A stretch of 64,000 bases of DNA, taken from positions 80,538,001-80,602,000 of the forward strand of contig CM069134.1 of the NCBI GenBank assembly GCA_035221665.1. Reading direction: 5' to 3'. This document shows, piece by piece, positions 1-61,841 of this stretch; within the stretch, counting starts at the first letter, position 1; every line of letters begins with the position of its first letter. Position numbers and translations under genes: made by a program. Below the pieces are notes generated by a model. That model was not told where the DNA came from and ran no database searches. It saw only the letters and a program-made list of their open reading frames with translations. The DNA comes from Okamejei kenojei. Lineage: Eukaryota.

Positions 1-225
1 CCTCCCCCATTCATCCCGTACTGATCCCCCCCATCCATCCCATACTGATCCCCCCCCCATTCAACCCCCACTGACATCCCCGCGCTCTCTACTCACAATT
101 TTACCTACTCCAACCAACACAAACTAATTCCCCTGCCTCAATCCATCCATTCCGCACCGATTTCCTTCTCAGCCCCCCCGCCATCTATCTATCCCGCACT
201 GATTCACCCACACCGCCCCGACCCT
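1..225. repeat. C-rich degenerate tandem repeat (unit approximately atcccgcactgatcccccc)
   Basis: Repeated cccgtactgat / catactgat / cccgcactgat units. Confidence 0.6.
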
Positions 226-2520
226 ACCGCTGGAAATGTCTTCAGAGCGAACATTGATTATATCTGATAACGGAATGCAAACAAATGTGTTTTAATTCAC
301 AATGTTATTATTTATCTTAATCTGTAAAGATGGATGAATTAAATTGTGAACACGAGATACATTAAAACCGGAGTGTTCGATTGTCACTGCTACCTTTGAC
401 ACATTATTACAGAATTCATTTTAATGGCAAATCAATGCTCTTAATATGGAGTATTTGTACTGTAGTTATTTAATGAGCAACATTCACAACTATACTTTGG
501 ATTTATCCAGGGTTTTATTTCTACAGTCGGTCATATACATTACGAACTTGGTCAGGAGATATTTCAGTTGAAATTTTAACATTAATTCTGAAGTGGGAAT
601 GATGGAAACATGTTTATCAATAATTTTTTTAAAACCTGGTGTATACAAACTGGGTATCTTCATTGCTGTTCACAACACATACATCTAATCTGAATGTCTG
701 GTAATGTGGCATTTTGACACCTTTAAACATATTGCGAAATGAACATTTGCTGCAGTTATGTCCTTTGGCCATCTCTTGTCACTTAGTGTAATGTTTAACC
801 TGTCAGATGGGTATAGTCAGTTTTAACAGCTATTATCATAAAATGCCTTTAGAAATGTCCTTGCAACCTGTATGTTTTGTTGTTGATAAATTATGTGGGA
901 AGCGAGAGCGTTTATGTACTAATAGCAATAACGACCCACGCTATGGCCATGTCATGATGATTTTCGGTCCTTCACAAAAAACATGCTTGCTTCAATCTGT
1001 AGTGTGCATGGTTAAGCATATATGTTACCATGGTCCAGGATTTATTGGCACAGGTTGATCATACGCTGAATAATCCAACCACATTTTTGTTTGGAAGTGG
1101 AAAGAAATAATAGAAATTGCATTCATTGCAATGTGTAAAAAGAGTTGAGATACTGTATTATAATTTTGCTGCATGTCATTGTGGTATATATCATGTCTTG
1201 ATTGGTGAATATGTTTAGTTTGTGACTTTATTTGAAGCAGAAATAATATGTGAATTCTTCATTGAGCATAATTCCGACAGGTAACTGCGCACTTCGTCCG
1301 AGCACATTATCGCACGCGTCATGCAAGCCGTCTTAAATGATCACCTAAACTGTCAAATGGCAACCTAAAAAGCTGCCTAGGTTGCCCGGCTGGCAACAGG
1401 GATAATAAGTTAAGTGAGAGCCCTGGTTGGTTCACAAACCTGATAGTTGTAGGAAAGTGGCTATACCTGAACCTGATGGTGTGGGATGATATCAGTGAAA
1501 AGAGGGCAAGGGTCCTTTGTTGGGGATCCTTGATGATAGATTCTTGAGGCAGCACCTCGTATAGAGATGGAGATGGAGATGAAAGCTGTTCCCATGATAG
1601 ACAAGACTAAGTCTACTGCTCTCTGTAGCTTCTTGCGTTCCTGTACGTTGGAATTGCCATACCAGGCCATGTCTTGCAACCAGTGAATATACTTTCTTCG
1701 GCAATATGTTTCAAAGTTTATCAGTGTTTATCAGTGTATTCAGAAACATGTTAAATCTCTTCCAGCATAAGAAAATAGAGGAACACAAAGCTGGAGTAAC
1801 TCAGCAGGCCTTTTTCATAGTGTGCCTTTTTCATAATGACATCTGTGTGCTGGGCCCAGGGCAAGTCATGTTGAGCGAGAAGTTGTTATTGTGCCACCTC
1901 TCAACCACATGTCTTATCTCTCTCCTGTATGCTGACTCACCACGACCAGTGATACAACCAACAACAGTGGTGTTGTCAGAAAGGACAACAAATTAGTTAA
2001 GTAAGTTGCATCTAGTGCAAAGAAGCAATGCTTAACAGAGTCACACTCTGTTCCTCAGAACCTCAGTGACTTTCCCTTTGAGAGGCTGTAGCAAGGTAAT
2101 TTATTGTTGTGTTCACTTGATTGTAGCTTCTTTTCTTCTAGACTGCCTGCTTTGTCTCTTAGACCCTGTTATTTTGTTTGCTTTGATCTGAAATATGTCT
2201 CCCAGACTATCTCTTTGCACAATAGACATCATTATTTTGTTTATCAGTCCTGTTAATTTACCTAACCTTGATGTGATAATCTTATCAGACTCTGCCACAA
2301 ATGTCCTTGTCTAATTCTCCCATTATTCCATCAATTCTTGTTTATTTATTATAGTTATATATAGTTAATTTATTTTTGGTTCTATCCATTGTTGGTACAT
2401 TCCTTGCAAATTTAATTAATAATTTAAACTTTAAAAAAAACTTAAATTAAGTACCATTTACCCAAATGCAGATCATTAATATGTATTAAGAAAAGTGGTC
2501 TTGGTATTGACCCTCGGGAA

Positions 2521-3097
2521 GGCAAGGCAAGGCAACTTTATTTATATAGCACATTTCATACACGAGGCAGACTCAAAGTGCTTCACATAAAAACATGTCA
2601 TACAATAAAATGAAATAATAAAAAGACGAAATAAAATAGAAGAATTAAAAGAAAATAAAAGCAAAGTAAAAAATGCATTATAGAAAAGTGCAAATGTTAA
2701 AAGTGCAATGTAGTTAGGATTTAGCTGAAAGCTAAAGTAAACATAATAAACGTTTTCAGTCTTGTTTTAAAAGTGGTCAAAGTTGGGGCAAGTCTTAAAT
2801 CTTCAGGAAGTTTATTCCAGCTATTTGATGCATAGTAACTAAATCCTGCTTTTCCCATGTTTTGTATTTACCCTGGGAATCACTAACAGATTGGTCTCTG
2901 AAGATCTTAGCAGTCTAGAAGACTTATATAGTGGAAGCATGTCAGTGATATACTTTGGCCCTAAACCATGTAGTGATTTATAAATGAGCAGCAAGATTTT
3001 AAAATCAATTCTCTGACAGACAGGGAGCCAATGTAATGATTTAAGAATTGGTGTAATGTGTTCAAATTTTTTGGTCTTTGTTAGAACTCTAGCAACA
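2521..3097 (-). mobile_element. L2-like LINE 3' fragment
   Basis: (ggcaa)n tail at 2521; the - strand near 3000-3090 encodes TKKFEHITPILKSLHWLPVCQRIDFKILLLIYK, typical of an L2 ORF2 C-terminus. Confidence 0.7.
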
Positions 3098-3262
3098 GTG
3101 TCCCATAAATATCTTCACATAAATATCCCATAGCCCAAAAACAAACTTTGAAAACTCAATTTCTTAATCAATATTGTACCCATGCTACTGCATCCCTTTT
3201 AATTCCATGAGTTTCAAGTTTGACAAATCAATTATTAATGTATAATCAATAAACCTTGTAGC

Positions 3263-3558
3263 CATTACATCAATGACCCCATGGATGTCCCTGGCCAGGT
3301 CCTGCCCCGAAAGCAGTGGGCAACCCCCAACCGCTTGAGCACAGGCATCGGACGCTATGGAGTAGCAATGAAGAGGTGGGGCCTCGTGGACAGCGCCTCC
3401 TGCGAGTGTGGTGACCCAACACACCCAGTGGAGCACATTTGCCCCAAACACCAGCCACCGAATGGTGAACGAGGTCTGACTGACCTGGATGATGACACGT
3501 TGGCCTGGCCCGCCTCAATGGAGCTGCAGGTCTAAAAGACATATGACAGAAGAAGCAG
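3263..3558 (+). mobile_element. 5'-truncated non-LTR retrotransposon 3' end (Ingi/Vingi-like)
   Basis: W..PNRLSTGIGR...KRWG...CECG....EHI.CP zinc-knuckle remnant, (AGA)n tail, 15-bp TSD aataaaccttgt(a/g)gc at 3248-3262 and 3559-3573. Confidence 0.75.
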
Positions 3559-3667
3559 AATAAACCTTGTGGCTGAAATGTATCATTGCTGAAACCATTC
3601 TAGTAGATATTAGTATATATTTATTATCGTCACTTATACAGAGGTGCATTGAGTGCTATCCAGTCAT

Positions 3668-4000
3668 TAGAAGCATAGAAAATAGGTGCAGGAGGTGGCC
3701 ATTTTGCCCTTCGAGCCTACACCGCCATTCATTGTGATCATGGCTGATTGTCCCCTATCAATAACCCGTGTCTGCCTTCTCCCCATATCCCTTGACTCCA
3801 CTAGCCACTCTATCTCTATCTAACTCTCTCTTAAATCCATCCAGTGACTTGGCCTCCACTGCCCTCTGTGGCAGGGAATTCCATAAATTCACAACTCTCT
3901 GGGTGAAAAAGTGTTTTCTCACCTCAGTCCTAAATGACCTCCCCTTTATTCTAAGACTGTGGCCCCTGGTTCTGGACTCGCCCAACATTGGGAACATTTT
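3668..4000 (-). mobile_element. CR1-type LINE 3' end
   Basis: GESRTRGHSLRIKGRSFRTEVRKHFFTQRVVNLWNSLPQ motif. Similar 3' ends occur at ~7597-7826(+), 7898-8232(-), 32350-32590(-), 46165-46437(-), 59560-60010(+) and 60715-61100(+). Confidence 0.85.
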
Positions 4001-5189
4001 TATTGTATGTGAGTATAATCACAGACACAATGTGTAGTGCAAAGAGAAAAAGAACTAGAGTGCAGAATATAGTGTTACAGATACACAGGAAAGTGCAGAT
4101 TAATAATAGTGCAAAATGAAGTAGGTTGGGACTACACCCTTAGTTTATGAGATGTCCACTCAGTAGACTGATAACAACGAGGATAGCTGCTCCTGAATCT
4201 GGTGGCTCGTGTTTTGCTCTTCACTCTTTATGGCTTTTGTGCCTTCCACCACCCTTTGGTGATTAAAATGGGAAGCAAACCTCTATTTACAACCTAAGTG
4301 GTGTTTTATTCAGGTTCAACAGTACTTCCCTGTTTTTGTACTCATAAGGTCATGTGATAGGAGCAGAATTAGGTCATTCGGCCCAATTCTGCAAAAAGGA
4401 CAACAATATATTTTCAAGACACAATTGCGTGTAACTTTAAGGAGAAACTGCAGGTGGTGGTGTTCCCATGCCCATGGTCCCCTCGTCCTCCTGATGTGCT
4501 ATTGGAGTGGCCTGCAATTTTGAAGGGGGCACATGGTGCTGCAACAACGATAGTTGAATTGAGTGGTTAGTATCTTAGTTGGGATGCTAATCAAGCAGGC
4601 TTTTTTTCTGAATAGTGTGCTGTTTGTGTTGTTGCAGCTACGTTCATGTAGGTGAGTGGAGAGCATTCTGTCATATCGCTGAGTTTACTTGCATAGCGGG
4701 TTGAAAGCCTTTAGAGTGTTGGGAGGTGAGTCACCCGCGACAGGATCCCCAGCTTCTGACCTGCTGTTATAACCACACTACTTGTGTGACTAATGACCCA
4801 GGTGGAGAGGAAAGAGCTAATTTGTGAGCAACAGCTCGTACAATACATTACCTACACTACATCCGTTTCACCCATCACCTCTGAGCTTGCTGAGAATCAC
4901 TGACTGACAGTTCTGGTTCTGGTTGATTACTGCGCAAACACCTCATCAGTGGTTATCTTGCGCAGGTCGGAGTGAGTAGAGTAGTGATTAAATTTTGAAG
5001 TGGGCCTTTTTGTTAAGCAGTGCTGCAATTATAATATCCTCATTCTGGTTTTCCATGTTCCTCCATGGTCAAGTTCTATAATCCACAGTGCTCTCTGATC
5101 CTTGAAATCTTTGTATTCCTCTATTTCTGGACATTGGGTCTTGATTATAATCACTCCATCACCTGTGGCCAAGTCTTCAGCTACTAAAG

Positions 5190-6345
5190 GATGCAACATG
5201 CTGGAGTAACTCTGGGTCAGACAGCATCTCTGGAGAAAAGGAATATGTGATGTTTCTGGTCGAGATCCTTAATCAGATTGAGAGTCAGGGAGGGGGGAAA
5301 CTAGAGGTATTGTAATGCCCCTGTCCCACTTAGGAAACCTGAGCGGAAACCTCTGGTGACCGCGACCCAAGGTTTCCACTCGCTTGGAAAGCCTTGACCT
5401 GGAAAGCTTCGAGCTGCATATTCCGACCAAAGATCCTATAGGATCTTTGCTACCGACCACACACAACACCGCGAAGGTGGGGGCCATGGAGAGCGGAGGA
5501 GAGCTGTCTGTCTGCAGTGAAGAGGAAGGTAAACGGCTGCCACAGAGCACGATAAGTCTTTAGAGAGCGCGGGGGGGGGGGAGGGGTGGAGGAGAGCGCG
5601 GGGGAGAGAGAAATGGGGAGAGAAAAGTGGGGGAGAGAGAAGGGGGGAAAGAAGGAGTGGAGGCAGTTTTAAAAGTTTAATAAATTTAGCGGGCATTTTA
5701 CCCTGGCGGGTCTTCGAAGTCCTGAAAACTCCAATGAGCCAATCAAAATGGCCGGTCAGCGAAGGAGATGGCCTTTGACTGCCTGTAAGTAAATAGCGAC
5801 CCCACCCCACTGGCTTCGACCAAACGGCAACCTATTTTTAGTCGAGGCCAGTTTTGATTTTGTTGAAACAATCGAAGCAACCTAGATGAAGCCTCAACCA
5901 CGCGGAAAACACTTTCGACCATTAGGGAGAGTGACTAAAACCTCCGGCGACCTCGTGGAAACCTTGGGTCGCGGGCAAGGTCACCCGAGGTTTCCGTTCA
6001 GGTTTCCTAAGTGGGACAGGGGTATTAGGTAGAGAACAAAGGAGATTCTGTATCGATGACTCAGGAAAGGTGGAGTCAACATTGGTTCATTGTTGGCAGG
6101 AGACGAAGGGATAACGAAGGGATACAAATGGTGAAATTAGCAAGAGGATTAGGGTCGGAGGGGGAGGGAATGCAAGGGTTACTTGAAGTTAGGAAAATCA
6201 ATAGGCTGGGTTGCAAGCTGCCCAAGTGAAATATGAGGTGCTGTTGCTCCAATTTGTGTGTGACTCTGACAGTGGAGGAGACTCATGGCAGAAAAGTCGG
6301 TATGGGAGTGGGAAGGTGAGTTGAAATGTTTGGCAACTGGGAGAT
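5190..6345 (-). mobile_element. Penelope-like element 3' fragment (GIY-YIG C-terminus plus terminal repeat), interrupted by a MITE
   Basis: LPVAKHFNSPSHSHTD..SLLHCQ remnant at ~6180-6345, continuous across the 5316-6024 insertion with the gctggagtaactc..cagcatctctggagaaaagg terminal repeat. Confidence 0.75.
5316..6024. mobile_element. PIF/Harbinger-like MITE
   Basis: Long imperfect TIRs tgcccctgtcccacttaggaaacctga...tcaggtttcctaagtgggacaggggta; TAA and TTA flanks. Confidence 0.82.
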
Positions 6346-8338
6346 AGCAGGGGTGCCAACATTGGGCGAGAGTTGGGAGTGAGAAATTGCGAGACCAAGC
6401 CCAAGGGAGCGCAGCGACCGGGGGGGGGGGGGGGGGGGGGGGCTGTGGGAGTAGGGTGTCCCCCCTCCCATTGGTACATAACTTTTGCATTTTTCAGCTT
6501 GAAATTGTGTAATATGGTGCATACTGTAGCGAGTCTTTTAACTTGCGCTTGAATGCAATATATATGCTTTAAATTGGATTAGCTATGAATAAGGTTAGAG
6601 TAAATTACATTCCTAATTACATTCCACAGAAGAGCCCAGGCTCTGATCCATACTTGCAGCACATGAATGATCTTAGTGTATTCATGTATGGAAATCAGAT
6701 TATAATCAAACACTTGGCCCATGTTGGCCAACCTGGGTCTCACTGCACACCTGGTGGACTACTGGCCCTGACTCAAGTTGCATACCTTCTCTCATTCCTG
6801 TCCCTGAGTCCAGCCCTACACCTGGCCCCATATTCTACCCTGAACACTCCCCTGGTCCCAGCTTTGACTGCACGCCTAGTACTGTTCCAGACCTTGACTC
6901 TAGATGCACATTTGGCCTTGCTCCTAGCCCCTTTGCACTGACAATATATCTGGTCCACACATAAAGCCCCATATCTGACCCCCTGGACTTAACCTATTAC
7001 GTTCAAGGCCACAGTTGCTTAGCTAATGCAGTAATCCTTTATGGGGCACTTCACAGACCAAATTATGGATAACACAATTTGCTACATTCATTGACTTCCT
7101 TGTTATCTAACATGCTAGTCACTTTGTCAAAGAAGTCATCAATTGGTTGAACACAATTCCCATCCATAAAATTATACTCACTCAGCTGTATAAGTAATCT
7201 GATACAATTTCTTTCATTTTCGTAACAAACTGTCCTGAAGTCATCAGGCTAATTACAAATCAATAACATTAGCCAACTCCGAAACCTGAAGCGCTGAGCA
7301 TTGGGATCCAAACATCATGGACTCAGTTCCCTGCTCACATCTGGCAGTGTTCTCCATCTGAACCAGGGGCCGCGGAACGTTTTTGAAAGTAGGGAGGCTG
7401 AGTAATCACTGATCACTGATCACTGGCCTTGGGGGTACCCGGTGAGGGAGTGGAGCAACCGAGTGGGGAGAGGGTGTGGAAGAAGGGTGTCCCCCCCTCT
7501 CCGGGTAGTAACTTTTTGAAATTTGATGTATTAAAATCATGTTTTAGTGCATTGTAGAAGTATGATTTCAATGTTTTTTGTATGAAGTATTTTTAAGGGG
7601 TAATTTATCCACGCAAAGGGTGGTGGGTGTTTGGAACAAGCTGCCAGAGGAGGTTGTTGAGGCAGGGACGATCCCAACATATAAGAAACAGTTAGACTGA
7701 TACATGGATAGGACAAGTTTGGAGGTATGGACCAAAAGCAGGTAGCGTAGCTGGGACGTTGGCGGGAGTTGGCAAGTTGCGCTGAAGGGCCTGTTTTCAC
7801 ACTGTTTCACACTGTATCACTCTATGACCACATTATACCTCCACCATGCATGAATGCTTCAAAATCAAGTGATCGAGTTTTATTGCCATATACTCAAGCA
7901 TAGAAACGTAGAAAGTAGGTGCAGGAATAGGCCATCGGCCTTTCGAGACAGCACTGCTATTCAATATGATCATGGCTATTCATCTAGAATCAGTACCTCT
8001 TTTCTGTTTTTTCCCCATATCCCTTGATTTCGTGAGCTAAATATAACTCTCTCTTGAAAACATCCAGTGAATTGGTCTGCACTGCCTTCTGTGGCAGAGA
8101 ATTCCACAGATTCACAACTCTCTGTGTGAAGAAAGTTGGTCCTCATCTCAGTCCTAACTGCCCCCCCCCCTTTATTCTTAAACTGTGACCCCTGGTTCTG
8201 AACTCCCCCAACATCAGGAACATTTTTCCTGCAGTTACAGTAAGTGAAAATCGAGCAGGCAAGCAGGATGCTTTCTCCAACCACCCCCATTTGAAGTCCA
8301 CTATCGTCCACCGTTTCTACCCAGTGCTTGGTACTTAC

Positions 8339-8476
8339 TTCCAGCAGCCACTGGTTGTCCTCCAGGATGCACCGAGCCGCCGCCTGATCCATGCTGGTCA
8401 CCTGGGCGAATTTGGCACAGAGACTCTCACGGCAGCGGCGCAACGCTTCCGACGCCTTGCACTGAGGCAGCTTCAT
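8339..8476 (-). pseudogene. TDP2-like exon 1 fragment (UBA-like N-terminus), orphan exon
   Basis: MKLPQCKASEALRRCRESLCAKFAQVTSMDQAAARCILEDNQWLLE|gtaagt resembles the TDP2 N-terminus (LCVEFASVASCDAAVAQCFLAENDWEME). No downstream TDP2 exons are recognisable in 1-8338. Confidence 0.72.
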
Positions 8477-8706
8477 GGCCGGAGCTGCAGTGAGCGACAC
8501 GCCAGCCCGGCAAACACTCGCCAGCCCCGCTCCCCGTCAGCATCTGTCCCCGTCGCTGCTTCTGTTTCAACTCCCTTGGCCCATGCAGTTGATATGAGTT
8601 TTGACATTTTCGTTGATCACAGAATTTCTCACGACAGAGCGCGAGAAATTTGTGATCAGCGTGAGAATTTGGCGAAATACGTGATTCTCACGCTCAGTGC
8701 ATGGGA

Positions 8707-9650
8707 NNNNNNNNNNNNNNNNNNNNNNNNNNNNNNNNNNNNNNNNNNNNNNNNNNNNNNNNNNNNNNNNNNNNNNNNNNNNNNNNNNNNNNNNNNNNNN
8801 NNNNNNNNNNNNNNNNNNNNNNNNNNNNNNNNNNNNNNNNNNNNNNNNNNNNNCTCCCCCCCTCTCCTCTCCCCTCTCCCCGCCCCTCTCCCCCCCCACC
8901 CCCACCCTCTCCCCCCTCAATTTCTCTCCCCATGTCTCCCTCCCCCCTCTCTCTCCCCCCCTCTCTCCCACCTCACTCTCCCCCCTCTCTCTTGTCCCCT
9001 CTCTCCTCTCTCTCCCCTTCCTCTCCCCCTCTCCTCTCCCTCTCTCCNNNNNNNNNNNNNNNNNNNNNNNNNNNNNNNNNNNNNNNNNNNNNNNNNNNNN
9101 NNNNNNNNNNNNNNNNNNNNNNNNNNNNNNNNNNNNNNNNNNNNNNNNNNNNNNNNNNNNNNNNNNNNNNNNNNNNNNNNNNNNNNNNNNNNNNNNNNNN
9201 NNNNNNNNNNNNNNNNNNNNNNNNNNNNNNNNNNNNNNNNNNNNNNNNNNNNNNNNNNNNNNNNNNNNNNNNNNNNNNNNNNNNNNNNNNNNNNNNNNNN
9301 NNNNNNNNNNNNNNNNTCCCTCTCTCTCCTCATCTCTCTCCCCTCTCTCTCCCCCTCCCCCTCCACCTCACTCTCCCCAGGCTCTCTTTCTCCTCTGTCT
9401 CTATCTCCTATTTCTCTTTGCCCCCCATTTCCCTCTTTCCCCCGTTTTTCTCTTTCCCTCTTCCCCTCTCTCTCTCTTTCCCCCCCCCTCTCTCCCATTC
9501 TCTCCTACCCTCTCCACCCCCCTCTCTCTCTTCCCTCTTTCTTCTCTCTCCCCCCCCTCTCCCTCTCCTCTCTCCCCATTCCCCTCTGTCTCTCCCTACT
9601 CTCTCCTCTCTCTCTCCCCCCGTCTCCTTCCTCTCTCTCTCCACCTCCCT
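8707..9650. repeat. CT-rich low-complexity tract with two assembly gaps (N 8707-8853, 9048-9316)
   Basis: Directly visible in the sequence. Confidence 0.95.
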
Positions 9651-9670
9651 TTGAGAGTCTCTGTCCCGTC

Positions 9671-10014
9671 GGCACAGAGACTCTCGCGGCAGCGGCACAA
9701 CGCTTCCGACGCCTCCGATCGGCCCGGGACTTGCACTGCTCCACGGCCGGAGATGCAGCGAGCGACTCGCAGTCCCCGCAAACACTCGCCAGCCCCGTAA
9801 ACACTCGCCAGCCCCGTCCGCATCTGTTCCCGCCGCTACATCTGCATCCATCCCTCCCTCAGCCCCGGCTCTCCAACACCCGCGGACCATGCAGTTTATC
9901 TGAGTTTTGACATTTTTGTTGATCACAGAATTTCAGAGCGTGAGCAATTTCTGATCAGCGTGAGGTCGTGAGAGTTTCTTCAAATGCGTGATTCTCACGC
10001 TCAGAGCGTGAGAG
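9671..10014. repeat. Diverged second copy of 8414-8706 (partial TDP2-like exon plus transposon subterminal region)
   Basis: Shared blocks ggcacagagactctc, caacgcttccgacgcc, aaacactcgccagccccg and ccatgcagtt..tgagttttgacatttt..gttgatcacagaattt..gtgattctcacgctcag. Confidence 0.88.
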
Positions 10015-10595
10015 TTGGCAGCCCTGGAGATAGTTACCAAGGTCCTTTACACTCAGATTGTTTCTCTACTTCCTTCTTTTCCTGCTTATCATGCCTATCA
10101 TGCTTATCATGTTTTTGGCTGATCAGTTACTATTTTCTGGTGTGTTTTTGTCAAATGTTGTTAATTTTCTTGGGAAGTGCATGTTACTATATTCTGTTGT
10201 GCTGCAGCAAGCAAGAATTCTATTGTCCCATCTGGGACACATGACAATAAACTCTCTTGCCTTGAAGTGCCTGGAGTGTTCTATTTTAAAGTTGCTCTCT
10301 AGCATAGTTATTATCAAGCTTATAATTGTAAATGAGTACTGTTCTGTGGGGACACATTATTTACTGGTATAAATGCAAGGGGGCGAAAGAAGAGAACAGT
10401 TTATTTCTCTTTTACTATATGATAATTTGTAGTTGCAGATTTCCACCAATAAGTTGTTCACTTTTATATTCATTCAAGTCTAGTTAGTTTTATTAAATTG
10501 TTTTAACTTTGCACTCCTGAGCTCTTACCTTTACGTTCTTTCGCAGCTCGTGGTGATGCTGAATCTGTTAATGATTGGCGCCAGGCCCTTGCAGG

Positions 10596-10820
10596 ATGAG
10601 CAAGTTGCCGACTGGCCCGGAAAATGCTGGAGTCAATTCCTTTGGTCACAGCGCCTCCATCAGTACTATGCAATCCATCACCGCATCCCAGGTTGCAGCT
10701 AGGCTAGACTCGTATAAACCAATTGGTAAAAGAAATATTTCTGATGTCAGGAGGACTTTCTGTTTATTTGTTACGTTTGATCTACTATTTGTTGGTTTGT
10801 TGTGGATAATCGAATTGAAT
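10596..10820 (+). CDS. STARD3NL: STARD3NL first coding exon (acceptor AG ends 10546, ATG 10596)
   Basis: MSKLPTGPEN...ISDVRRTFCLFVTFDLLFVGLLWIIELN followed by gtaagt. Confidence 0.95.
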
Positions 10821-13800
10821 GTAAGTACTAAACTTTTTATTGATTTGCATTCTGATGAATGGGTGTTAATAATTCTGTTGTTTCTTGAAACGACTTTGTG
10901 GATATAATTGTGGGGTGAAGTAACAGCTGAGAGAAGGAGTTGGTGGGAAGCTTGGCTTGTGGCGAAAGCATAGAGGGCAGGATCTCACCAAAAATGGATG
11001 GAGAGTAGTTGTACACAAGCTTTCCTTCGGAACAGATGGGATCAAGGCCTACAGTTTCTGGTTTTGTTTTCTGCCTTTGTCAGGAATACTCATTTTATAT
11101 TTTAGATGTCAGCAATGTTTTGGTCAGAAAGATTCTTGTTGCAAAATCAGATATAACAATCGGGTCATGGTTTTATTCATCTAATGACGGTAACTTTTTT
11201 GGGAAGTCACAGTAAACTATAGATAACTTCTGTATTTATAAGGTTTGTGTTGATATTTCTACCCCTGTTCCCTTTTCTATCCTGGTTCCCCACCATTAGC
11301 ATCCTTGCTCTTTGTCGAGAAAGAGTTGTAAACCGAATTATGGGTAAATTCTTCTGCTGGCCTGTGACTGAAGACTTTTGCAGTTTTATCTATTTTTCTC
11401 CTGACAGTAAATTCTGTTTTCCCGATGATCTTCAGCCAGCAACTTTATTTCAGTAGTTAGTTGACCAGAATTGCACAACATGATTTTTTGAGGATCTGAT
11501 TTATTTTCTTTTGTAAAATTCTGGGAACCTTTGCTTTCAATTTTGCAGTTGAGCCGATCTCCTACTTTCATTTTTTTTAAACTGGGTGGCACAGTGACGC
11601 AGTGGTAGACTTGCTGCCTAACAGCGCCAGAGACCCAAGTCTCTGACGCCGTTGTGACCCTATGACTGTGTGTTTTCCCCGTGGTGCAAAATTATAGGAG
11701 GGGGGGAACCTCTATAAGCCAATCACAAATAAAGATCATATACATTTATTGACAGTTCCCTAACCTAATCACAAAGTACCCCATTACATTGTTTCCACAG
11801 AAGACAGTTCACCAAAGTAAAGAAACATTTCCCCAGGTAGTATAAAGAATTTGAACAAGGCTCCATACATTGACCAATCATAAGATAACAGCACAAACAC
11901 TCCGCAGCATAATTAACAATACTTTGCAACACCCCAATCTATAACCAATCATGATCATGCATTTGCAACCCTGCCCAGCTCTTTCTGCAAAACCCTCATA
12001 CATATTAACAATAGGGAGGACATCTGGACATCACCTTGTACTTACTTCCTCCCAGGGTCCAGACACCCTGGAGCCATGACTTATGACCCTGCAGCTTTTC
12101 ACAGAAAGAAAACAAGCAGGCTTTGCAAATGCAGAGATCCTCCATTTTGTGACATATTTATTTGGCCAATATTATCAATGAGATCCATGGAGATCTAGCA
12201 AACTGGATACAGAATTGGCTTCATGGAAGGAAGGCAACGGTGGCAGTGAAAGGCTGTTTTTCGGACTGGAGGCCTGTGGAGAGTGGTGTGACTCAGGGAT
12301 TTGGATGAAAATGTACAAGGCAAGATTTAGTAAGTTTACAGCTGACATTAAAATGGGCGGTATCGTAGATAATGCAGAAGGTTATCAACAATAACAGCAG
12401 GCGCTTCATCATCTCACCAAGAGGGCTGCAGAATGGCTTATGGGGCTTAATGCAGATAAGTGAGATGTGTTGCGTTTGGACGCGATGGGCAATATTTAAT
12501 ATGAACCTAATATATGGACAACCACCCTCTGATTGAAAAAGTTGCCCTTCACGTTCTATAACAGCATTTAAAACACACTTGGACGGGTATGTATAGGAAA
12601 GGTTTTGAGAGATATGGACCAAGCACAAACAAATGGGACTAGCTATGATAGAGCATCTTAATCAGCGTGGACGACTTGGGCTGAAGGGCCTGTTTTCTTG
12701 CTGTATAACTGACATTAATAGCAGCACTGTTTAGAATCCCACAAACAGAACATTAATTTTGTTGAAATCATTATTAATAAAGTGTTGTCACTTTGAGTGG
12801 TAAAAATTGTTATGTGTATTTGATCCACATTTTAAATTAAATAGTTGCCAAACATTTCTAGATGTAACATTATTTCACTCAGTTTCAATAACAACTGTTA
12901 ACAAAGTGATTCTACTTATCTTTCCTTTTATGTTTTCCAGGTAGATGGAGGCATAATTCATAGTTTAAAGAATGAAGTTATTAATTATAATTTCAAGTAC
13001 TCTTACTTCGATATATTTGTGAGTAAATGTTCTCATTTCCCTTGAAGAACTTGCTAAATGCTACATTCTAAATCTGGTGTGAGTTTTATCTATCTCTCTT
13101 TGTTTTTGCAGTTACTGGCAGTATTTCGATTCTTTATGCTAATTTTTGCATACGCTCTGTGTAGGTTACGCCATTGGTGGGTGATTGCGGTGAGTGACTC
13201 TTCTTGGCTGTTAAGATGGGAAATTGACCTATTAAATGTCGCCCAGAAACGCGACTCTTTTCAAATCAGGCAAAAATTTGAAAAATATTGTACACATCTG
13301 ATTTTTAGGTTATGGCACTCTATTGCAGGGGAAAGAATCAATGGTCTTAATGCAAACTGTCCACATTAACAACTGTCCAAAAGGATATATTCTCTGCAAT
13401 CACCTGAGCAATAAACTTGCCTTTTGCCTGGTTGCAAAGGCAAGTCTAATACAAGGTGATTGTAGACGTTGTATCCTGACAACCAATAATCAATAACAAT
13501 TATCTGTTGGATGAGAACATTAGCAGCTTTCCTCCAAATGTTGTTTTCCCACTGCATAGACAACAGAGCCGCCTGAACATGTTGGAGACAGCGGGGCTAT
13601 TAGAAAGGGTAAAGCACCAAATTGCTTTTATATATGGTCATAAGGAATAGGAGTAGAATTTGGCTATTCGACCCATCAAGTCTACTCTGCCATTCAATTA
13701 TGGCTGAGCTATCTCTCCCTCCTCACCCCATTCTCCTTCTCCCCATAACCTCTGACACCTGTACTAATCAAGAATCTATCTCTGCCTTAAAAATATTCAC

Positions 13801-28500: not shown

Positions 28501-31500
28501 ATGTTGTTAGGGCTCAGTGGACTGAGTTATAGGCTAGGACTTTATTCCTCAAAGTATAGAAAACTGAGGGCTGATCTTATAGAGGTGTATAAAATCATAA
28601 AGGGCAAATGGTGAATGCACACAGATTGGGGAATTGAGAATTATGGGCCTGTCCTACAGGTGTCTTTTTAGGCGACTACAGGAGACTATGCAGTCGCCAC
28701 ATGTTCGCGGGTAGTTGTCGGGGAGTCGCCTTCATGGTCGTGAGGAGTTCCTGCATTCTGGGAACATGTTGAAAAATTAGCGGCGACTACAATAAAGCCG
28801 CCATTGAGAGTAGCGAGAACTCTCGTGCCGTAGGTGGGTCGCCAGGAGGTGCAAGTGGGTTGCCAGGAGTCGAAGGTTCTTGTAGGTTACAGCCGGTGCT
28901 GACCGGTGAATTTCATTGGCTCGTTGGGGAAAAAAAAAACGTAAGCAGTAGTTTTCAGAACCAAGGATATCCGACCGGTAAGCTTCACAGCCGTGTAGCT
29001 CTGGCTTGGACTTGAGCTGAGGCAAATTGTGAGCTAACCATCAGGGAAACGTGCTGATGGGAATCTGTCTGCCTAACAATCTGTTGTAGATGTATCTGTC
29101 CAACGCAGCACAGGTGATCACATTGTCCTAATAAGCATAAAATGATTTAGGTTTCTCCTTGTTTGTATCTGCCAAGGATAGTGCGTGGCCTTTTTGTGCC
29201 CCTAATTTATTTTGTGCTATTCTCCTGCACCATTGTTATTTCTCAAATGACTCACTTGATTGCAACTACACAAACCTGTCATGTTTCCTTCCCCCCCCCC
29301 CCCCCCCCCCCCCCCCCATCAAATCTTTAATGGCCTTGTTGCCCAATGCATTAAAGGGTTCAAAAGAGAATAGGAGGAGCAGCACTGAAGAGCGAGTGGT
29401 AAGGTGGTGAAGACACAGCAGTGGCGCCCTTGCACATTAGAGGGAAAAGTAACCATCCAACGAACACAATCAACGCCCAACATCTTGTCTCATTCATGCA
29501 TGGTTGCTGTTGGTCGCCGTGTGTGTGTGTATTGGGACGGGGATGGGCATTGTATAGGTCATCCTCAATGATAAGAGTAATAATCCGTAGTTGGTCTACA
29601 TTTTAACTGTATAGTTGAATAGCCACGGTGTCTTCTGAACTCCATTGATATACAGCACTCATAGGAATTGCTACAACGAATAAATAAAATTGAATCATTA
29701 CAATCAATACAGTGAATAAATAGAAAGCAACCCATTTCAAAGCGTTATAAAATATGATACAATTTAAAAAATAATAAAATCTCACTAAACAAATTTATTT
29801 CACGATAACCTAAGGGCCAAGGCCACCGGTGAGTATTTCCTGTAATGTTAATTTAATTCGGGGGTGGAACTAGTTGGCGCATTCACAAGAAATTCGCCCC
29901 TGACGTGAGCTGCATGCTACACACAATTAATCACAGCAAAAAGACGCACTCGCTCTTTTTAAAAAAAAAGTGATCTATAAGGTGCACCTTTAATCTGGTA
30001 TGAATCTAACGACAAAATGGCAATTTAATGAAAACTCTCCGAGATATTGAAACGCCATTTGGCGACTTGCCTAACGTGCGGAAAGGGCATGCTTGTCCAA
30101 AGTGACAGCGAGGCACAAGAACACGAGAAACAAGGGAGACTTCAGGCCTGCGGTTTATAACGAAAGTGGTTCACTTTGTTTAGTGGGTACTGTTTGGGAA
30201 TATTTTCTTTATCCTGCTGTGTTACTCCAGCACGATGCCCTTTTATCTGTTAACCAGCACCTGCAATTCTCTATTTCTCCATGTCAGTGCTCTCTGCCGC
30301 TTTACCTTACTCCACAACAAAGCAGCCACAGACCCAGTTCCAAACTGCCGTCAGCTTCCGAGAAAGGGTAATTTTACTCTGGGATTGTTATACATTCGTT
30401 TGATTTCAGCTGCAGCCTGTGCCTCTTAAATGATCTTAAAGCCGTAACAACTAACAATACGCTATGAAATAAATCACTGATTCCACACAAAATCTCACCC
30501 CACGCCTCTCAAATACCTACTAGTGTGGATCAACAAAATTCAAACCTGGACCCTTAGAATTTGCTAATTCATGTGGAACTCGAAGGATAAACTACTTTCT
30601 CAAACATACCTTACGCTTTATTTCATCAACCCAATACAATATCTGCAAATAAACTGACAGAAATATTTGACCAAAATGTTGCAAATTTTATTGTGCACTT
30701 GAAAATTACTTGATATCGGTCCCCCCAAAAAATGGTCCCGGACCATAATCATTAACCTGTTTCCTTTCTGTTGAGCCCTAATGTTTTCAGCAGTTCTTCA
30801 AAATCCCCAGCATTTGAGGACAGTTTTAAATGTGCCATTATAGGCAAGGCTAACATTTTTGTTCTTTCTGTAAGTACAGATTGTAAGCTGCATTAAAGTT
30901 CCACGTCGGCCATAGTGGGATCTGAGCTCAATTCACGAGATTGGCAGAGGGATAATTTAATCACAGTCTCATCACTATATGCCCCTCCCCCACGCTTCTG
31001 CCACACCGTGTTTGCTTTAATTTGTGAAAGTTATACTTTATTTATATTTGATCCCATAAACTTAGGACATCCCGATGTGTTATGTAATATAGCAGAAGAA
31101 TTAAATGTTCATTCAAGTCACACTTGAAGCGCCCATTTTGCGAGTTCTCACAAACAATATTATGATGCAGACTAAATGTTCTGTTTCGGAATGTTGACGG
31201 GGATAAATACTGAAATATTAGTTGCGACGCGCGAAATAACTTTTCCCTCTACTCAAAGGTTGTAGTAGTGTGAAATATATTTAAGTTCACATGTGGACCA
31301 AAGGGGCTCGGAAAGACGGCGTCGCTTGTAGCACATGAGCACCATACCAGATTGCCAGCCTGGATAAAGGGACTCGAGTCTCTGGAATGGTGTTGGAACA
31401 TAACCTACTAAAGCCTAAAGATAAAAGTGCATATTGACATGGCACTAATATCCCCATGTTTTTGATCCATTATCGAAGGATCATTTTCAATGCAATTACC

Positions 31501-34500
31501 CGAGCAAATCGTGTTAATTTTGTGAACGCCTTAAATCAGATCATACCCCAGTCGTTTGTATTTGACAGAAAAGAAAGTAAAGCCCACGGGGAAACATTTT
31601 ATTCCACTATTGTCACGTTATTAATTTGTCTTCGTTTTTTTTTAACTATCATCACATACTTTGCTACTTTTAACATGTTTTAAGGGAGGGTGAGGCAGGG
31701 AGGAAGTAAGAGAAGAATAAACAAATGTGCTAGGTATTCGTGGCAGAAATATGTAAATTCTCAAGTAACTGAACAGAACAAAGATGGACGAGTCTCTATA
31801 GGTTCAACCACGGCCTATCTGATAACTAGGCTAAGAGCTAAAGATTAAAGTTTACGGTTAAATGAACATTATTTCCTGTTTTGGCAACTTCGCGGACGGT
31901 TAATCAGATCTGCTAATGCAGAGGAAGTGGCATGCTGTGAACAGTTAAAATAACCGTTTGCCGTTCTGTAAAATATTTCAAACCTCTCCATTTGTTCCAC
32001 ACTGCACTTCTAAACACATACACAGATATTGTCACAGCACGTAGTACTTTCCTATGCTTATCTAGTTCCCTTTTTCACGATTGAATACGCTCCCATTTGA
32101 TTTAAACTAATGAATTCCACATCACATCAACTCATTGTTTAAAATGAAATAATATTCTTTTAACGTACCCCGACTATTTTCCCCAGAATGTAGGAACGTA
32201 GAAATAAGAAAGAATTGGTTATTTGACCTTTGAACCTGCTCCAAAATACTTTAGGACCATGGCTGATGCACTGCTGTATCTGTATTTTCTCATCCCATCT
32301 CTATTTCTTCCATTTCCATTCTTGTCTAAAAAGCCATGAACCCTAGTTACATACATAGACAATAGGTGCAGGGGTAGCGCCGCAATTCAATGTGATCATG
32401 GCTGATCATTCACAATCAGTACCCCGTTCCTGCCTTCTCCCCATACCACTTGATTCCCCCAGCCATAAGAGCTCTAACTCTATTTTGAATGCATCCAATG
32501 ATCGTCCACAATGATTTCCACAAATTCACGACTCGCTGTGTAAAAAAGTTTTTCCACATCTCAGTTCTAAATGGCCTACCCCTTATTCATGTTCGAATAT
32601 AAACGATAACTGAGCATTCACAGCAGTCTTAGATAATGTCAGAATACGTGTAACTGTTTGTATGGAGAAATGTCTCATCGTGTGAACCCTAAATGCTCAC
32701 CCCTTTTCTGAGATTCTGCACCTGGATGCAAACTCTCCACTCCGAGGAAACAGCCTTGTAATGTTCACTCTGCTAACCACCCTCTCCCTCAAAACCTTCC
32801 TCCACGAGATTACCCCCCATATTCCCAACTCTAGTGTGTATTGGACTGTCTTAATCTCGGCCCGTGGGACATTCTTTCCTATCCAAATATCAATGTAGAA
32901 AATCTGCACCACATTGACTTGGAAGGAAACGAATTCCTCCTTCGCTGTGGGCATCAAAACGATTTAAAATGGCTCACTAAACCCAAACTTTCTAGCTTCT
33001 CTTCTTTCAACCTTTGAACAGTTGTACTACATTTTCCATCCGAAAAGAGCTGCCCAGCATTTCCGGACTAAGCACGTGATTTAAGGCCTCTTTCCCTCGT
33101 GTTGCCCTTGTGATTCCCATCTGTGACGCTTCTCAGGCCTTGACATCCTTCCTAGAGCACGGTGCCGAGACCGGAAACAATATTCCACTTGAGGCAAACC
33201 TGTATTTTCTGTATGTATAAGCATTTGGTTAACAGGATTAAACTCAACAAGTAACTGAACATAGCTCAACAAGGAGCCATTCTTTACAACCAGTTCTTAT
33301 CAATGCTCCACATGAGCCTGCTCTCATTCCTTCGCATCTAAATCTCTCTAACTTGTTATTCCTGCCTCTCTGGTACGATTGTCTGGTCTCCCTTATAAAC
33401 GTATCAACAAAACCGGAGGCAGGAGTATTGACCAATCAAGGCCGCTGTATGATTTAACAAGATTATGGTTGATGATTTTTTTGAAATTCCAGCAACATTT
33501 TCTTGTCCTACCCGATTCCCCTAATATCTAGAATTTTTTGTCCCGAGGCAGATACGATAGTGGCATTTAAGCGGCTTTCAACTGGTACAGGGATATGGAG
33601 GGAATGGAGGGGTGTGGATCATATAGAGGAGATTCGTTTAACTTGGCACCATCTTCGACACGGACGGTGTGCTGTACTGAGTGGGATAGGTTGGATGCAG
33701 CAGATTAAAAATAATTTCCATATTTTACCCATCAGAGAATAAACTTTAAGTGCAAATTTTAGAGCTGAGAAGATCCCTTTATGCCTCTACCCACCAGGTC
33801 TCCATATTCTTCCTAGCAAAATGTATCACTTCACAGTTATCACTATTCCAGTATTTGTAAATGAGACATGTCAAGGGCACACACTGTAATCGTGTTAACA
33901 GCAAGTCATGTGCGCGCTCCAGGGTGGATTTAGCAGCAGCTCGTAAGCATGACATTACCACATCGCCTTTCGCGGAGCTGATCACACCAATGTATTCGAT
34001 GTTTATTATATTTTCTTTATCTTAATTATTGCGCAAAACTCAGACAAATAACTTCAGTAATTTGGATTTTTTGTTTTTGTGATTGGGAATCGGTTTCACT
34101 TTTCTGTCCCGGATGAGATCAACGCAAGTGGCTGCAATTAGATAAAACTAAATGCTGAAGAAGGCAAGTAGGAGAGGATTGAATTCCGGAAAGCGTGCTG
34201 TACAATTCCATGCTGGAAATTTTCAATACACATTGGGTTTATATTTCGGCGGTAAAATGGGATTGAGAGGGAAAGGTAAATCAGCCGCTATTGAATGGCA
34301 GAGTAGAATTGATGGGCCGAATGGCCTATTTCTGCTGCTTGAATGTATGAACTTGTATTTCAGAGAACACAGAGTGCTGGAGTAACTCAGGGGGCCAGGC
34401 AGCATCTCTTGAGGACATGATAGGCGACATTTCATGTCGGGACGCTTCTTGTATTGCAGGACTTTGTATCTTTTAGCACGAGTGAATTCCGTTGGATAAA

Positions 34501-56145: not shown

Positions 56146-58239
56146 GCTGGTTGTCGGGTAGTGACAGGATTTAACATCTGTCTCAACTTGGGTTGGCGGC
56201 ATATAATACCGTCAATCTTCAAGTGCTATTTCGTCGACCCGGCAGTGTCTCTTCTGACACAAACCACGCCTTCTAACCTCGTTTCTAACTTTTTCGAGGT
56301 TCGTCTTCGATTTTCTGAGACACAGCACGGAAACAAAGGGCCCCTTCGACCACCGAATCGCAGTCCGAGCGAGCGGATTCACACCCTGTAGACTAACACA
56401 TCCTACTGCCTACCGGACCAATGAACCTATAAACCTTGTGCATCTTTGTGAGTGTGGGGAGAAACCGGAGACACAAGTAAAAAAAACCACTGTGGTCACG
56501 GGCAGACAGCACTGTAGTGCCCAGTTCATAGGTTCGTAAGTTTATGGGAGCAGAATTAAGACCATTTGACACATCACAGTCTACTCCGCATACAAACCAC
56601 GCGATCTATCCGTCCCACTCAACCATTCACCTGCATTCACCCCCATAAACCCCAAACCGTTCTAATCAAAGAAATATATAACTCTCGACAAAAAATATCT
56701 AGATTGACCCTGGCCTCCACAGCATTTGTGGCAAATAATGCCACCGATTTATAACTCTCTGACGTCAAGAGATTCTATCCCTATTCTCTTTCTATAGACC
56801 GTTCTTTTGATTCTGAGGCCAAAGAGCCTTGGCCCTCCATGACTACTCCCACTCTCGCGTATCTAATATTGTATAGATCTCAATTCGATGGTTCCCCTCT
56901 CCCCCTTCTAAAACCCCATGAGTAATTGGGCCCATTGGCGTAACCGCTATCATATACGTTCATAGAAACATAGAAGATAGGTGGCGCAGAGGCCATTGCT
57001 TCGAGCCACAGCGGGGGGGGGGGGGGGGGGGGGGCCATTCGTTGTGAATGGCTGAATCGCCCGATCAATAAACCCGCCTGGCCTGCCTCCATATCTTGAC
57101 CTAACAAAAAAACAAATTATTGGCCTGGGGATCAATTCTCATTAACCTACCCTGGATTTCCTCTACAAAGCCCTCAGTTTTTTTCCTCAGATAATGCCCA
57201 AAAATGCTTACGAATATTCCAATGCCGTCCCCGGTACCATTATTAAAGCCCTGCGTTTTTAATATCCTGTCTTCTGGAAATAAACGTTCACACTTGTCCG
57301 CAATCAAAAACGTTTGTTCCCTGGGCGCTGTAGTCCTCTGACGCTGTAAACTCTAATTCCGCTGCCCGCCCCACATGTAACCCGGACAATTTTTGTTACT
57401 TGCAGACCATTAAAAGAACCGCAGATGCTGGAAATCTAGAGCTAAAAATCCGAGGTGTGGTGGAATCATAAACCCAGCTGGTCTGGCCGCATGGTGTAGT
57501 AGGAGGGGAATGGACAGGACGACATTTCGACCGGGGACACTTCTTCTGACTCCATCTAAAGATGTGTCCCAAACTGAAACATCTACAGAAATGAGGAACA
57601 TAAAAGGATACCAAGTGCTAGCGTAACTCAGACGGTGTGGCAGCATCTATGGAGCATGTGGAAACGTTCTATGTTCATTCCCCATTCCAGATGAAGCTTG
57701 GCCCGCCGAGTTCATCCAAAATGTTGTTACTGTGCGGAACATGATATTTTAGAAGAAATCCACCCCAGTCAATAAGATGACTTTTTCTGCGCCAAAAGCT
57801 GCTTCGATCTTCCCCTTGTTTATGTAACGTGATGAAGGCAGCCGCCTCCTCCTTCTGCCTGATCAGTCACAAACCACCCATATTTAAACTGTTCTCTCCT
57901 TCCTTCATCCCTGCTATGTTAAATTCCCAAACCCTTGCAAAATGGTTGGTGTAAGTAACTTCAGCAAAGAGGTGCTGCTCCGGATCCCGACATCCCAACA
58001 TAATTTTCCTGGCCTTCCTTTATTCCAATCTTTTGACGTGAATTATGTGATAATCAGAATAATGCGATCCAGGAGCTACTCCACAACCACAGAAAGACTC
58101 TCCCCATATTGACTGGCCGAGCGTTTACTGCACTGAACCTGGAACTGCCTCGCCGCCAACAATTCCGGATTCAACCCCAAACCACCAGTCTTTTCACGTG
58201 AGACAGAGGTTCACAAACCCGCTAGTCTTTTCTGGTGAG

Positions 58240-61800: not shown

Positions 61801-61841
<41 letters not shown>

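What the first reader, a model, noticed from the sequence alone, without database searches (positions are those of the whole stretch)
6341..10033. Pack-TIR-like DNA transposon that has captured a TDP2-like first exon
Seen in sequence: 13-bp terminal inverted repeats (12/13 match) at 6348 and 10026, and an exact 7-bp target-site duplication GAGATAG. Inside, on the - strand, is a 46-codon ORF ending in WLLE|gtaagt, plus about 100 nt of apparent intron. Established knowledge: the peptide resembles the UBA-like N-terminus of tyrosyl-DNA phosphodiesterase 2, and as recalled it ends where TDP2 exon 1 ends. Inference: retention of the splice donor and intron means capture happened at the DNA level, not by retroposition. 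A non-autonomous element would then be carrying a piece of a DNA-repair gene with its GC-rich 5' flank and a strong donor. It sits antisense about 500 bp upstream of the STARD3NL acceptor at 10546 and could seed antisense or chimeric transcripts. A 7-bp TSD is atypical for canonical hAT elements (8 bp) and closer to P/Galileo-type elements.
Basis: partly seen in the sequence, partly recalled or inferred. Interest (0 to 1): 0.78.

Follow-up and report, generated by a model that had tools for sequence, protein, structure and literature searches.

The report
Skate jumping gene carrying TDP2 exon
A dead, non-autonomous cut-and-paste transposon next to the STARD3NL gene carries a copied start (promoter-like flank, first exon, splice donor, bit of intron) of the DNA-repair gene TDP2, and the same cargo travels in other copies of the element, which is a rare but already known kind of event in animals.

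Summary
A 13-nt inverted repeat (12/13) at 6348 and 10026 is flanked by exact GAGATAG. A 46-codon minus-strand frame (8476-8339) ends in a GTAAGT donor. It matches only TDP2 among solved structures and meets Pfam UBA_4 narrowly.

That copy, not the exon-bearing one, carries the right inverted repeat. The intact exon copy (8233-8706) stops at an assembly gap exactly 13 nt short of its expected end. It probably belongs to a second element nested in the first, with a left end near 7364.

Four unnamed public ORFs (P0001-P0004) repeat the upstream flank, exon and intron read-through, so this is a multicopy family. The exon is no better conserved than the intron stub. No TDP2 catalytic or transposase domain was found nearby.

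The scan noted TDP2-exon copies on other DNA of this genome (s1-880127, s1-880509).

- **Verdict:** new member of the known Pack-TIR kind.
- **Unresolved:** 7 versus 8 bp duplication, hAT versus P superfamily, and DNA versus unspliced-RNA capture.

The parts
6341..6347 (.). left copy of the target-site duplication GAGATAG (or 6340-6347 if 8 bp)
6348..6360 (+). left 13-nt terminal inverted repeat of the outer element
6348..6560 (+). left arm of the outer element, with a G run and a conserved core at 6434-6486
   Evidence: the core matches 7465-7516 with local score 43 against 18.0 +/- 2.5 in 300 shuffles (max 29)
6561..7363 (.). interior of the outer element, single copy in the window, CpG-poor, no protein family
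7364..7580 (+). probable left arm of a second, nested element. It starts CAGGGG and has the same core at a similar offset (102 vs 87 nt).
   Evidence: Inferred; its partner end is hidden in the gap.
7585..7835 (+). LINE 3' fragment (repeat with other copies in the window)
   Evidence: 77% to 36089-35864
7870..8232 (-).
   Evidence: 7901-8227 is 76.6% identical to 3668-4001, with further copies
8233..8338 (-). intron stub after the donor. It is conserved as read-through in P0001, P0002 and P0004.
8339..8476 (-). 46-codon TDP2-type UBA-like first exon with ATG and GTAAGT donor. It covers UBA_4 profile positions 2-30 of 43.
8477..8706 (-). GC-rich 5' flank and CGTGAG-rich subterminal arm of the exon-bearing copy. 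It ends at the gap at the position that aligns 13 nt inside the outer element's end.
8707..8853 (.). assembly gap, the expected place of the inner copy's inverted repeat and duplication. Not read and not filled.
8854..9652. CT-rich low-complexity filler with the second gap (9048-9316). Places 8994-9032 were left out of all searches.
9653..9685 (.). 16-nt-arm palindrome (94% complementary, 1-nt spacer) exactly where homology between the two module copies ends, at about codon 21
9671..10013 (-). right arm of the outer element: subterminal arm, 5' flank and the first ~21 codons of the exon. 248 of 300 aligned bases are identical to 8414-8706.
10014..10026 (-). right 13-nt terminal inverted repeat
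10027..10033 (.). right copy of the target-site duplication
10547..10820 (+). neighbouring STARD3NL-type coding exon (ATG 10596, MENTAL domain start, donor at 10821). Context only, not part of the element.

Best explanation
The region is a dead, non-autonomous TIR ('cut-and-paste') DNA transposon at 6348-10026. It has 13-nt inverted ends and a 7- or 8-bp target duplication. Its right arm is built from a copied 5' end of the TDP2 gene: a GC-rich flank, the first coding exon (UBA-like N-terminus), the splice donor and a short piece of intron. That makes it a Pack-TIR or transduplicate.

The arm-plus-cargo unit is a multicopy family. A second member, carrying the intact exon, probably sits nested inside the first, from about 7364 to just inside the gap at 8707. 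The outer member's cargo was cut at about codon 21 by a fold-back repair event that left a palindrome and low-complexity filler.

The peptide is a passenger. It encodes two-thirds of a UBA fold, shows no extra conservation, and has no downstream TDP2 exons.

Shown: ends, duplication, exon identity, two copies here, further copies elsewhere, absence of transposase.

Inferred: nesting, mobilisation in trans by a hAT- or P-type transposase, capture as DNA (gap repair or template switching, or two ends flanking the TDP2 5' region moving together), and neutrality.
For: - TIR 12/13 plus an exact flanking repeat. At least one such pair arose in 2 of 60 shuffles.
- Pfam UBA_4 at 22.0 bits against a cutoff of 21.8.
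- The only solved-structure hit at E up to 10 is the human TDP2 UBA, 6q00_B, at 8.4e-5. With a profile of copies it scores 1.7e-5, and C. elegans TDP2 (4f1i/4gew) is the only other UBA-bearing hit (E 1.6, weak).
- The two right arms in the window are 82.7% identical over 300 aligned bases. The alignment begins right after the 13-nt end.
- P0001 was the only hit among 1.84 billion representatives. P0002 and P0003 were 2 of 2 candidates. P0004 came from cluster listing.
- All four hits repeat the 5' flank and at least part of the exon. P0001, P0002 and P0004 also read through the intron stub; P0003 ends within the exon. P0004 also reaches the subterminal arm.
- The exon is no better conserved than the stub. 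Window vs P0002: 6 of 46 against 1 of 28 differences. P0002 vs P0001: 10 of 50 against 7 of 28.
- None of 85 minus-strand frames in 1-8340, and none of 34 frames inside the element, hit a TDP2 catalytic or transposase family.
- Pack-TIRs, mostly hAT, are documented in animals (PMC8277862, passages).
Against: - Beyond the 13-nt ends, the left and right arms are no more alike than shuffles (score 21 against 18.1 +/- 2.3). The pairing therefore rests on TIR plus TSD alone.
- The left flank is a copy of a host repeat whose paralogue (58384-58582) continues with sequence unlike 10034 onward. I got no paralogous empty site, and the host repeat simply ends at the junction.
- The element crosses two unread gaps. 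The inner copy's end and duplication cannot be seen.
- The native TDP2 locus was not available, so the parental copy, a defining item for a Pack-TIR, is not identified.
- No annotated TDP2 reached E 0.001 in the large library. A 46-residue query has little power there.
- The intron stub is fused to a LINE 3' end on the same strand, which also fits an RNA route.
Confidence: 0.6

Rival explanations
1. The UBA-like exon is the family's own first coding exon. On this reading an autonomous master element encodes a protein, a transposase or an accessory factor, whose N-terminus long ago took up a TDP2-like UBA. The copies here would be internal-deletion derivatives that kept the 5' end of that gene.
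For: - The exon sits where a transposon gene's first exon would sit: about 230-280 nt inside the end, pointing inward, behind a GC-rich flank.
- The arm and the exon travel together in every copy seen.
- A follow-up note in this genome (s1-880462) describes a transposase with an unexpected reader domain.
Against: - No transposase domain lies in or near the element.
- The exon is not better conserved than the intron stub.
- The best and only solved-structure match is TDP2 itself.
- I know of no transposase with a UBA_4 N-terminus (recalled, not searched).
Confidence: 0.12
2. The module spread as RNA. An unspliced TDP2 transcript that ended in a LINE 3' end lying in intron 1 was copied by the LINE machinery. 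The inverted ends and the GAGATAG repeat are then chance, or belong to an unrelated older element.
For: - On the minus strand the order is 5' flank, exon, 106-nt stub, then a 5'-truncated LINE 3' fragment in the same orientation.
- Note s1-880509 (title only) reports the same fusion on other DNA of this genome.
Against: - TIR plus exact TSD is unlikely by chance.
- The copies include at least 230-280 nt upstream of the ATG, with clustered CGTGAG motifs in both orientations, as in transposon subterminal regions.
- The outer copy lacks the LINE part.
Confidence: 0.12
3. This is the real first exon and promoter of TDP2 or of a paralogue, lying head to head with STARD3NL.
For: An intact ATG, a purine at -3, a perfect GTAAGT donor and a CpG-rich flank with o/e 0.81.
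Against: - At least five other copies exist: one in the window and four public ORFs.
- No catalytic-domain frame lies in the 8.3 kb downstream.
- The exon has a 6-codon gap relative to three of the four other copies, and a 4-codon gap relative to P0001.
- CpG-rich stretches are common here, 33 in the window.
Confidence: 0.04
4. The double right arm is an assembly artefact, for example mis-scaffolded contigs around repeats and low-complexity DNA, so the 3.7-kb 'element' is not one insertion.
For: Two gaps lie inside it. One contig ends exactly at a repeat boundary (8706) and a 194-nt low-complexity contig floats between the gaps.
Against: - The exact 7-nt repeat next to matching inverted ends ties the two outer contigs to one insertion.
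- The two arms differ by 17% with several indels, too much for haplotype duplication.
Confidence: 0.08

Closest known systems
Multicopy Pack-TIRs of animals (e.g. Pack-hAT-N8_XT carrying a CAPSL 5'UTR piece in Xenopus tropicalis; Tan et al. 2021, PMC8277862, passages read)
   Same: A non-autonomous TIR element carrying a short 5' piece of a host gene and amplified to several copies. The paper links multicopy cases to template switching, and there is a palindromic breakpoint here.
   Different: - The cargo here is a promoter-like flank plus a coding first exon plus a donor plus an intron stub.
- The host is a cartilaginous fish. The passage shown says 81 vertebrates were scanned; 'shark' does not occur in the paper's main text, and I did not see its species list.
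- The parental copy and distinct TSDs of the other copies have not been seen.
Zebrafish P-like Pdre2 elements (bioRxiv 10.1101/2024.03.22.586318, passages read)
   Same: The inverted ends are 13 nt long. By my own count, 8 of 13 (left end) or 9 of 13 (right end) positions are identical to the Pdre2 end quoted there, including the inner TG-CAAC. An 8-bp duplication is compatible.
   Different: No THAP9-type gene and no matching subterminal 12-mers were seen. The resemblance is a lead only.
hAT non-autonomous elements
   Same: Short ends beginning CAG (recalled signature) and a compatible 8-bp duplication. hAT is the commonest Pack-TIR carrier (208 of 370, PMC8277862).
   Different: The 8-bp reading needs a right end one base short. 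No hAT domain was found and the target motif was not checked against a consensus.
Native TDP2 (UBA-like N-terminus, PDB 6q00)
   Same: In residues 15-46 the peptide aligns to the human TDP2 UBA, chain 6q00_B residues 3-34 of 45 (the chain has 45 residues).
   Different: Only about two-thirds of the UBA profile is present. There are no catalytic exons, and the module is multicopy and inside a transposon.

Membership tests
Pack-TIR (transduplicating TIR transposon) | terminal inverted repeats at both ends | tested here: met
   12/13 over 13 nt
Pack-TIR (transduplicating TIR transposon) | target-site duplication flanking the ends | tested here: met
   Exact 7 nt (or 8 nt). Jointly with the TIR, at least one such pair arose in 2 of 60 shuffles.
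Pack-TIR (transduplicating TIR transposon) | internal segment derived from a host gene | tested here: met
   UBA_4 at 22.0 bits (cutoff 21.8). TDP2 UBA is the sole solved-structure hit, E 8.4e-5 and 1.7e-5.
Pack-TIR (transduplicating TIR transposon) | parental gene copy identified in the same genome | not testable with these tools
Pack-TIR (transduplicating TIR transposon) | no transposase of its own | tested here: met
   None of 85 and none of 34 frames hit a transposase family.
Pack-TIR (transduplicating TIR transposon) | several copies with different duplications (multicopy class) | tested here: inconclusive
   Copies shown, but their ends and flanks were not seen.
hAT superfamily | 8-bp target duplication | tested here: inconclusive
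   7 and 8 bp fit equally, because 6340 and 10026 are both G.
hAT superfamily | hAT transposase (or a named autonomous partner with the same ends) | not testable with these tools
   None in the window. The genome was not searchable.
P superfamily (Pdre/THAP9-type) | short (13-nt) ends like Pdre2 and an 8-bp duplication | tested here: inconclusive
   Length 13 is met. 8-9 of 13 positions are identical to the quoted Pdre2 end (my count). The duplication length is ambiguous.
P superfamily (Pdre/THAP9-type) | THAP9-type transposase partner | not tested
   No search was possible in this genome.
Native TDP2 gene | Exo_endo_phos catalytic exons downstream of exon 1 | tested here: not met
   None of 85 minus-strand frames of 30 aa or more in 1-8340. 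Longer introns are not excluded.
Native TDP2 gene | exon 1 ends at the same codon as in vertebrate TDP2 | not tested
The searches and the passages gave no exon boundary.
LINE-mediated chimeric retrocopy | unit ends at a LINE 3' end on the same strand | tested here: met
   Inner copy only: the stub is followed by a LINE 3' fragment at 8227 to about 7880.
LINE-mediated chimeric retrocopy | duplication flanking the transcript start and the LINE tail, with no TIRs | tested here: inconclusive
   The upstream end of the inner copy is in the gap. The outer copy ends in a TIR.

The most novel reading that the evidence does not exclude
The arm-plus-TDP2 module is not a dead passenger but a mobile 'promoter + first exon + splice donor' cassette. 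Each insertion would plant a CpG-rich start site and a strong donor that can splice a UBA-like leader onto nearby host exons or drive antisense transcripts, here opposite STARD3NL. Alternatively, it is the first exon of the family's own, still undiscovered, UBA-fused transposase gene.
Probability: 0.1. Interest if true: 0.7.

Novelty: new member of a known kind. Interest (0 to 1): 0.42.

Why it matters
- **Rarity.** Gene-fragment capture by cut-and-paste transposons is well known in plants. In a survey of 100 animal genomes only four multicopy cases were reported, three in frog and one in alligator (PMC8277862, passages).
- **What this case would add.** A multicopy family in a skate that moves a promoter-like flank, a coding first exon and a donor would add a cartilaginous-fish example. 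It would also offer a natural set of promoter/first-exon insertions in which exon shuffling and chimeric transcripts can be studied.
- **Annotation.** These copies will seed false 'TDP2-like' gene models. Four unnamed ORF predictions already exist in public collections.
- **As it stands.** The copy here looks dead and neutral.

Tried and rejected
- **Laying DNA and RNA runs on 6000-10700** to see empty sites, copy boundaries and use of the donor. The runs listed were therefore never laid. These were five organism labels with shares of 0.30-0.43 and two guessed RNA runs at 0.19 and 0.17.
- **Copies in JGI metagenome contigs.** 113 pattern matches, none confirmed.
- **Earlier-findings look-up by sequence.** Blank. 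By place near the finding: nothing to show.
- **Paralogous empty site.** The only paralogue of the left-flank repeat (58384-58582, 73%) continues with sequence unlike the right flank. There is no empty-site support and none against.
- **Similarity of the left and right arms beyond the ends.** At chance level.
- **CpG richness as a sign of promoter activity.** Rejected as evidence, because 33 CpG-rich stretches occur in the window.
- **Rfam.** No family on 5000-8706 or 9317-11500.
- **ESM Atlas.** UBA_4 clusters only, best 0.91. It adds nothing on TDP2 versus other UBA proteins.
- **Exon-1 boundary of TDP2 in papers.** Not found (search listings; passages of PMC6628236).
- **Prior description in print.** Searched 'TDP2 + transposon + captured' (7 papers, none relevant by title or abstract), 'skate + hAT + DNA transposon + genome' (9 papers, none on this) and 'Pack-TIR / gene capture / hAT'.
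- **Native full-length TDP2.** I could not obtain it. The length window of the search for homologous proteins excludes it for any stop-free query from this locus, and the one representative search returned only P0001.
- **Spliced models.** None was built or searched. Only the single exon was used.

Full report
**Observation.**
- CAGGGGTGCCAAC lies at 6348-6360 and its inverted partner, with one mismatch, at 10014-10026. GAGATAG directly flanks both.
- The inverted 13-mer alone is within chance: 2 matches found against 1.76 expected at up to 2 mismatches.
- The joint pattern is not. A 13-nt inverted pair with at most 1 mismatch and an exact adjacent 7-nt direct repeat, 200-8000 nt apart, occurred at least once in 2 of 60 Markov shuffles of the window (mean 0.033). 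It occurs twice in the real window, here and at 29836/31872.
- Base 6340 and the element's last base, 10026, are both G. An 8-bp duplication with a right end one base shorter gives the same empty site, so the '7-bp TSD' is not established.
- The minus-strand frame 8476-8339 reads 46 codons from ATG to WLLE, followed by GTAAGT.

**Identity of the peptide.**
- Pfam gives UBA_4 at 22.0 bits (cutoff 21.8), covering profile positions 2-30 of 43. That is about two-thirds of the domain.
- Against all solved structures, the only hit up to E = 10 is the UBA of human TDP2 (6q00_B, E 8.4e-5).
- A profile of four copies raises this to 1.7e-5. C. elegans TDP2 (4f1i/4gew, E 1.6) is the only other UBA-bearing hit. 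The three remaining weak hits are unrelated enzymes.
- The ESM Atlas returned UBA_4 clusters only.
- In the 1.84-billion-protein library no annotated TDP2 reached E 0.001. A 46-residue query has little power there, but this does limit the claim.
- I could not test whether the frame ends where TDP2 exon 1 ends.

- The segment 8414-8706 (5' flank, start of the exon, CGTGAG-rich subterminal stretch) has a second copy at 9671-10013. 248 of 300 aligned bases are identical, with several indels.
- That second copy carries the right inverted repeat and the duplication. Its exon stops at about codon 21.
- Homology ends at a 16-nt-arm palindrome (9653-9685), followed by CT-rich low-complexity DNA with the second gap.
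- The exon-bearing copy aligns to the outer arm from the base right after the 13-nt end, and it meets the first gap exactly there (8706/8707). Its own end and duplication, if present, are unread.
- A second 'CAGGGG' start at 7364 is followed, at a similar offset (102 against 87 nt), by a 55-nt core shared with the outer left arm. The local score is 43 against 18.0 +/- 2.5 in 300 shuffles, maximum 29.
- The simplest reading is two family members, one nested in the other in the same orientation. This is inferred.
- 17% divergence with indels argues against a haplotype or assembly duplicate.

**Multicopy family.**
- The large-library search returned one protein, P0001, 78% identical.
- The word-index search returned P0002 (83% identity, E 4.7e-36) and P0003, 2 of 2 candidates. 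The cluster of P0002 holds P0004.
- P0001, P0002 and P0004 are ORF calls that read from the upstream flank through the exon and on through the donor into the intron stub. P0003 ends within the exon. P0004 also covers part of the subterminal arm.
- So the arm, flank, exon and stub travel as one unit outside this window too.
- The exon is not better conserved than its non-coding surroundings. Window vs P0002: 6 of 46 exon against 1 of 28 stub differences. P0002 vs P0001: 10 of 50 exon, 7 of 28 stub, 9 of 32 upstream. P0004 vs P0002: 4 of 52 exon, 0 of 28 stub, 0 of 32 upstream. That fits neutral decay.
- Two first-reader notes on other DNA of this genome name TDP2-exon-1 copies (s1-880127, s1-880509; titles only). 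They are leads, not support.

**Not the native gene, and not autonomous.**
- None of the 85 stop-free minus-strand frames of 30 aa or more in 1-8340 hit Exo_endo_phos or any transposase family. The best hit was E 0.0051 to an unrelated DUF.
- Of 34 frames on both strands inside the element, the only credible hit was UBA_4.
- Introns longer than 8.3 kb are not excluded by this alone, but the copy number is decisive.

**Context.**
- The plus-strand exon 10547-10820 (ATG 10596, donor at 10821) starts a MENTAL domain (E 2.9e-5), as in STARD3NL or STARD3. The TDP2 module points away from it.
- The left flank (6020-6347) is a copy of a host repeat. Its one paralogue in the window continues with sequence unlike 10034 onward, so I have no paralogous empty site.
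- Beyond the 13-nt ends, the left and right arms are no more alike than shuffles. Pairing of the two ends therefore rests on TIR plus TSD.

**Route of capture.**
- A retained donor and intron exclude a spliced retrocopy but not unspliced RNA. On the minus strand the 106-nt stub is followed directly by a 5'-truncated LINE 3' fragment in the same orientation. By its title, note s1-880509 reports the same fusion elsewhere.
- Against the RNA route: the TIR plus TSD, the 230-280 nt of upstream sequence with CGTGAG motifs in both orientations, and the outer copy lacking the LINE part.
- I favour DNA-level capture. The candidates are template switching during gap repair, as proposed for animal Pack-TIRs in PMC8277862, or two transposon ends flanking the TDP2 5' region moving together.
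- The palindrome at the outer copy's breakpoint fits fold-back repair or template switching.

**Superfamily.**
- It is unresolved. The ends begin CAG, as I recall for hAT.
- They are 13 nt long and share 8 (left) or 9 (right) of 13 positions with the zebrafish P-like Pdre2 end quoted in bioRxiv 10.1101/2024.03.22.586318 (my count). Both superfamilies make 8-bp duplications.

**Comparison and novelty.**
- Tan et al. 2021 (PMC8277862; outline and passages) report 370 Pack-TIRs in 100 animal genomes, 208 of them hAT. Only four were multicopy, three in frog and one in alligator. 'Shark' does not occur in the main text.
- My paper searches found no description of a TDP2-carrying transposon or of Pack-TIRs in skates.
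- This is a new member of a known kind.

**Limits.**
- As a result, copy ends elsewhere, the native locus, empty sites, gap continuity and expression are all untested.

Noticed in passing
window 29836-31878: A second roughly 2-kb element with 13-nt inverted ends (12/13) and an exact 7-nt flanking repeat. Here too the base before the left repeat equals the element's last base, so 7 versus 8 bp is again ambiguous.
   Followed up: partly
window 5313-6027: A roughly 710-bp element with about 70-nt inverted ends (87-88% complementary), sitting inside the host repeat that forms the left flank of the finding.
   Followed up: no
window 10547-10820: The STARD3NL-type exon runs to 10820 with a GTAAGT donor at 10821, further than the point near 10692 that I had first taken for its end. 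Its first (5' UTR) exon was not located, so it is open whether the element lies in intron 1 or upstream of the gene.
   Followed up: partly
window 9653-9685: A near-perfect 16-nt-arm palindrome with a 1-nt spacer, exactly at the breakpoint of the truncated exon copy. It looks like a scar of fold-back repair or template switching.
   Followed up: partly
window 6420-6443 and 29291-29317, 57012-57035, 61804-61841: Long G (or C) runs of 23 nt or more recur in the window. One lies in the left arm of the element.
   Followed up: no
runs X15, X16: Two small runs guessed to be RNA, from the same organism label as the best DNA holders, hold 0.19 and 0.17 of the sampled words of 6000-10700. Which part they hold is unknown because nothing could be laid.
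   Followed up: no
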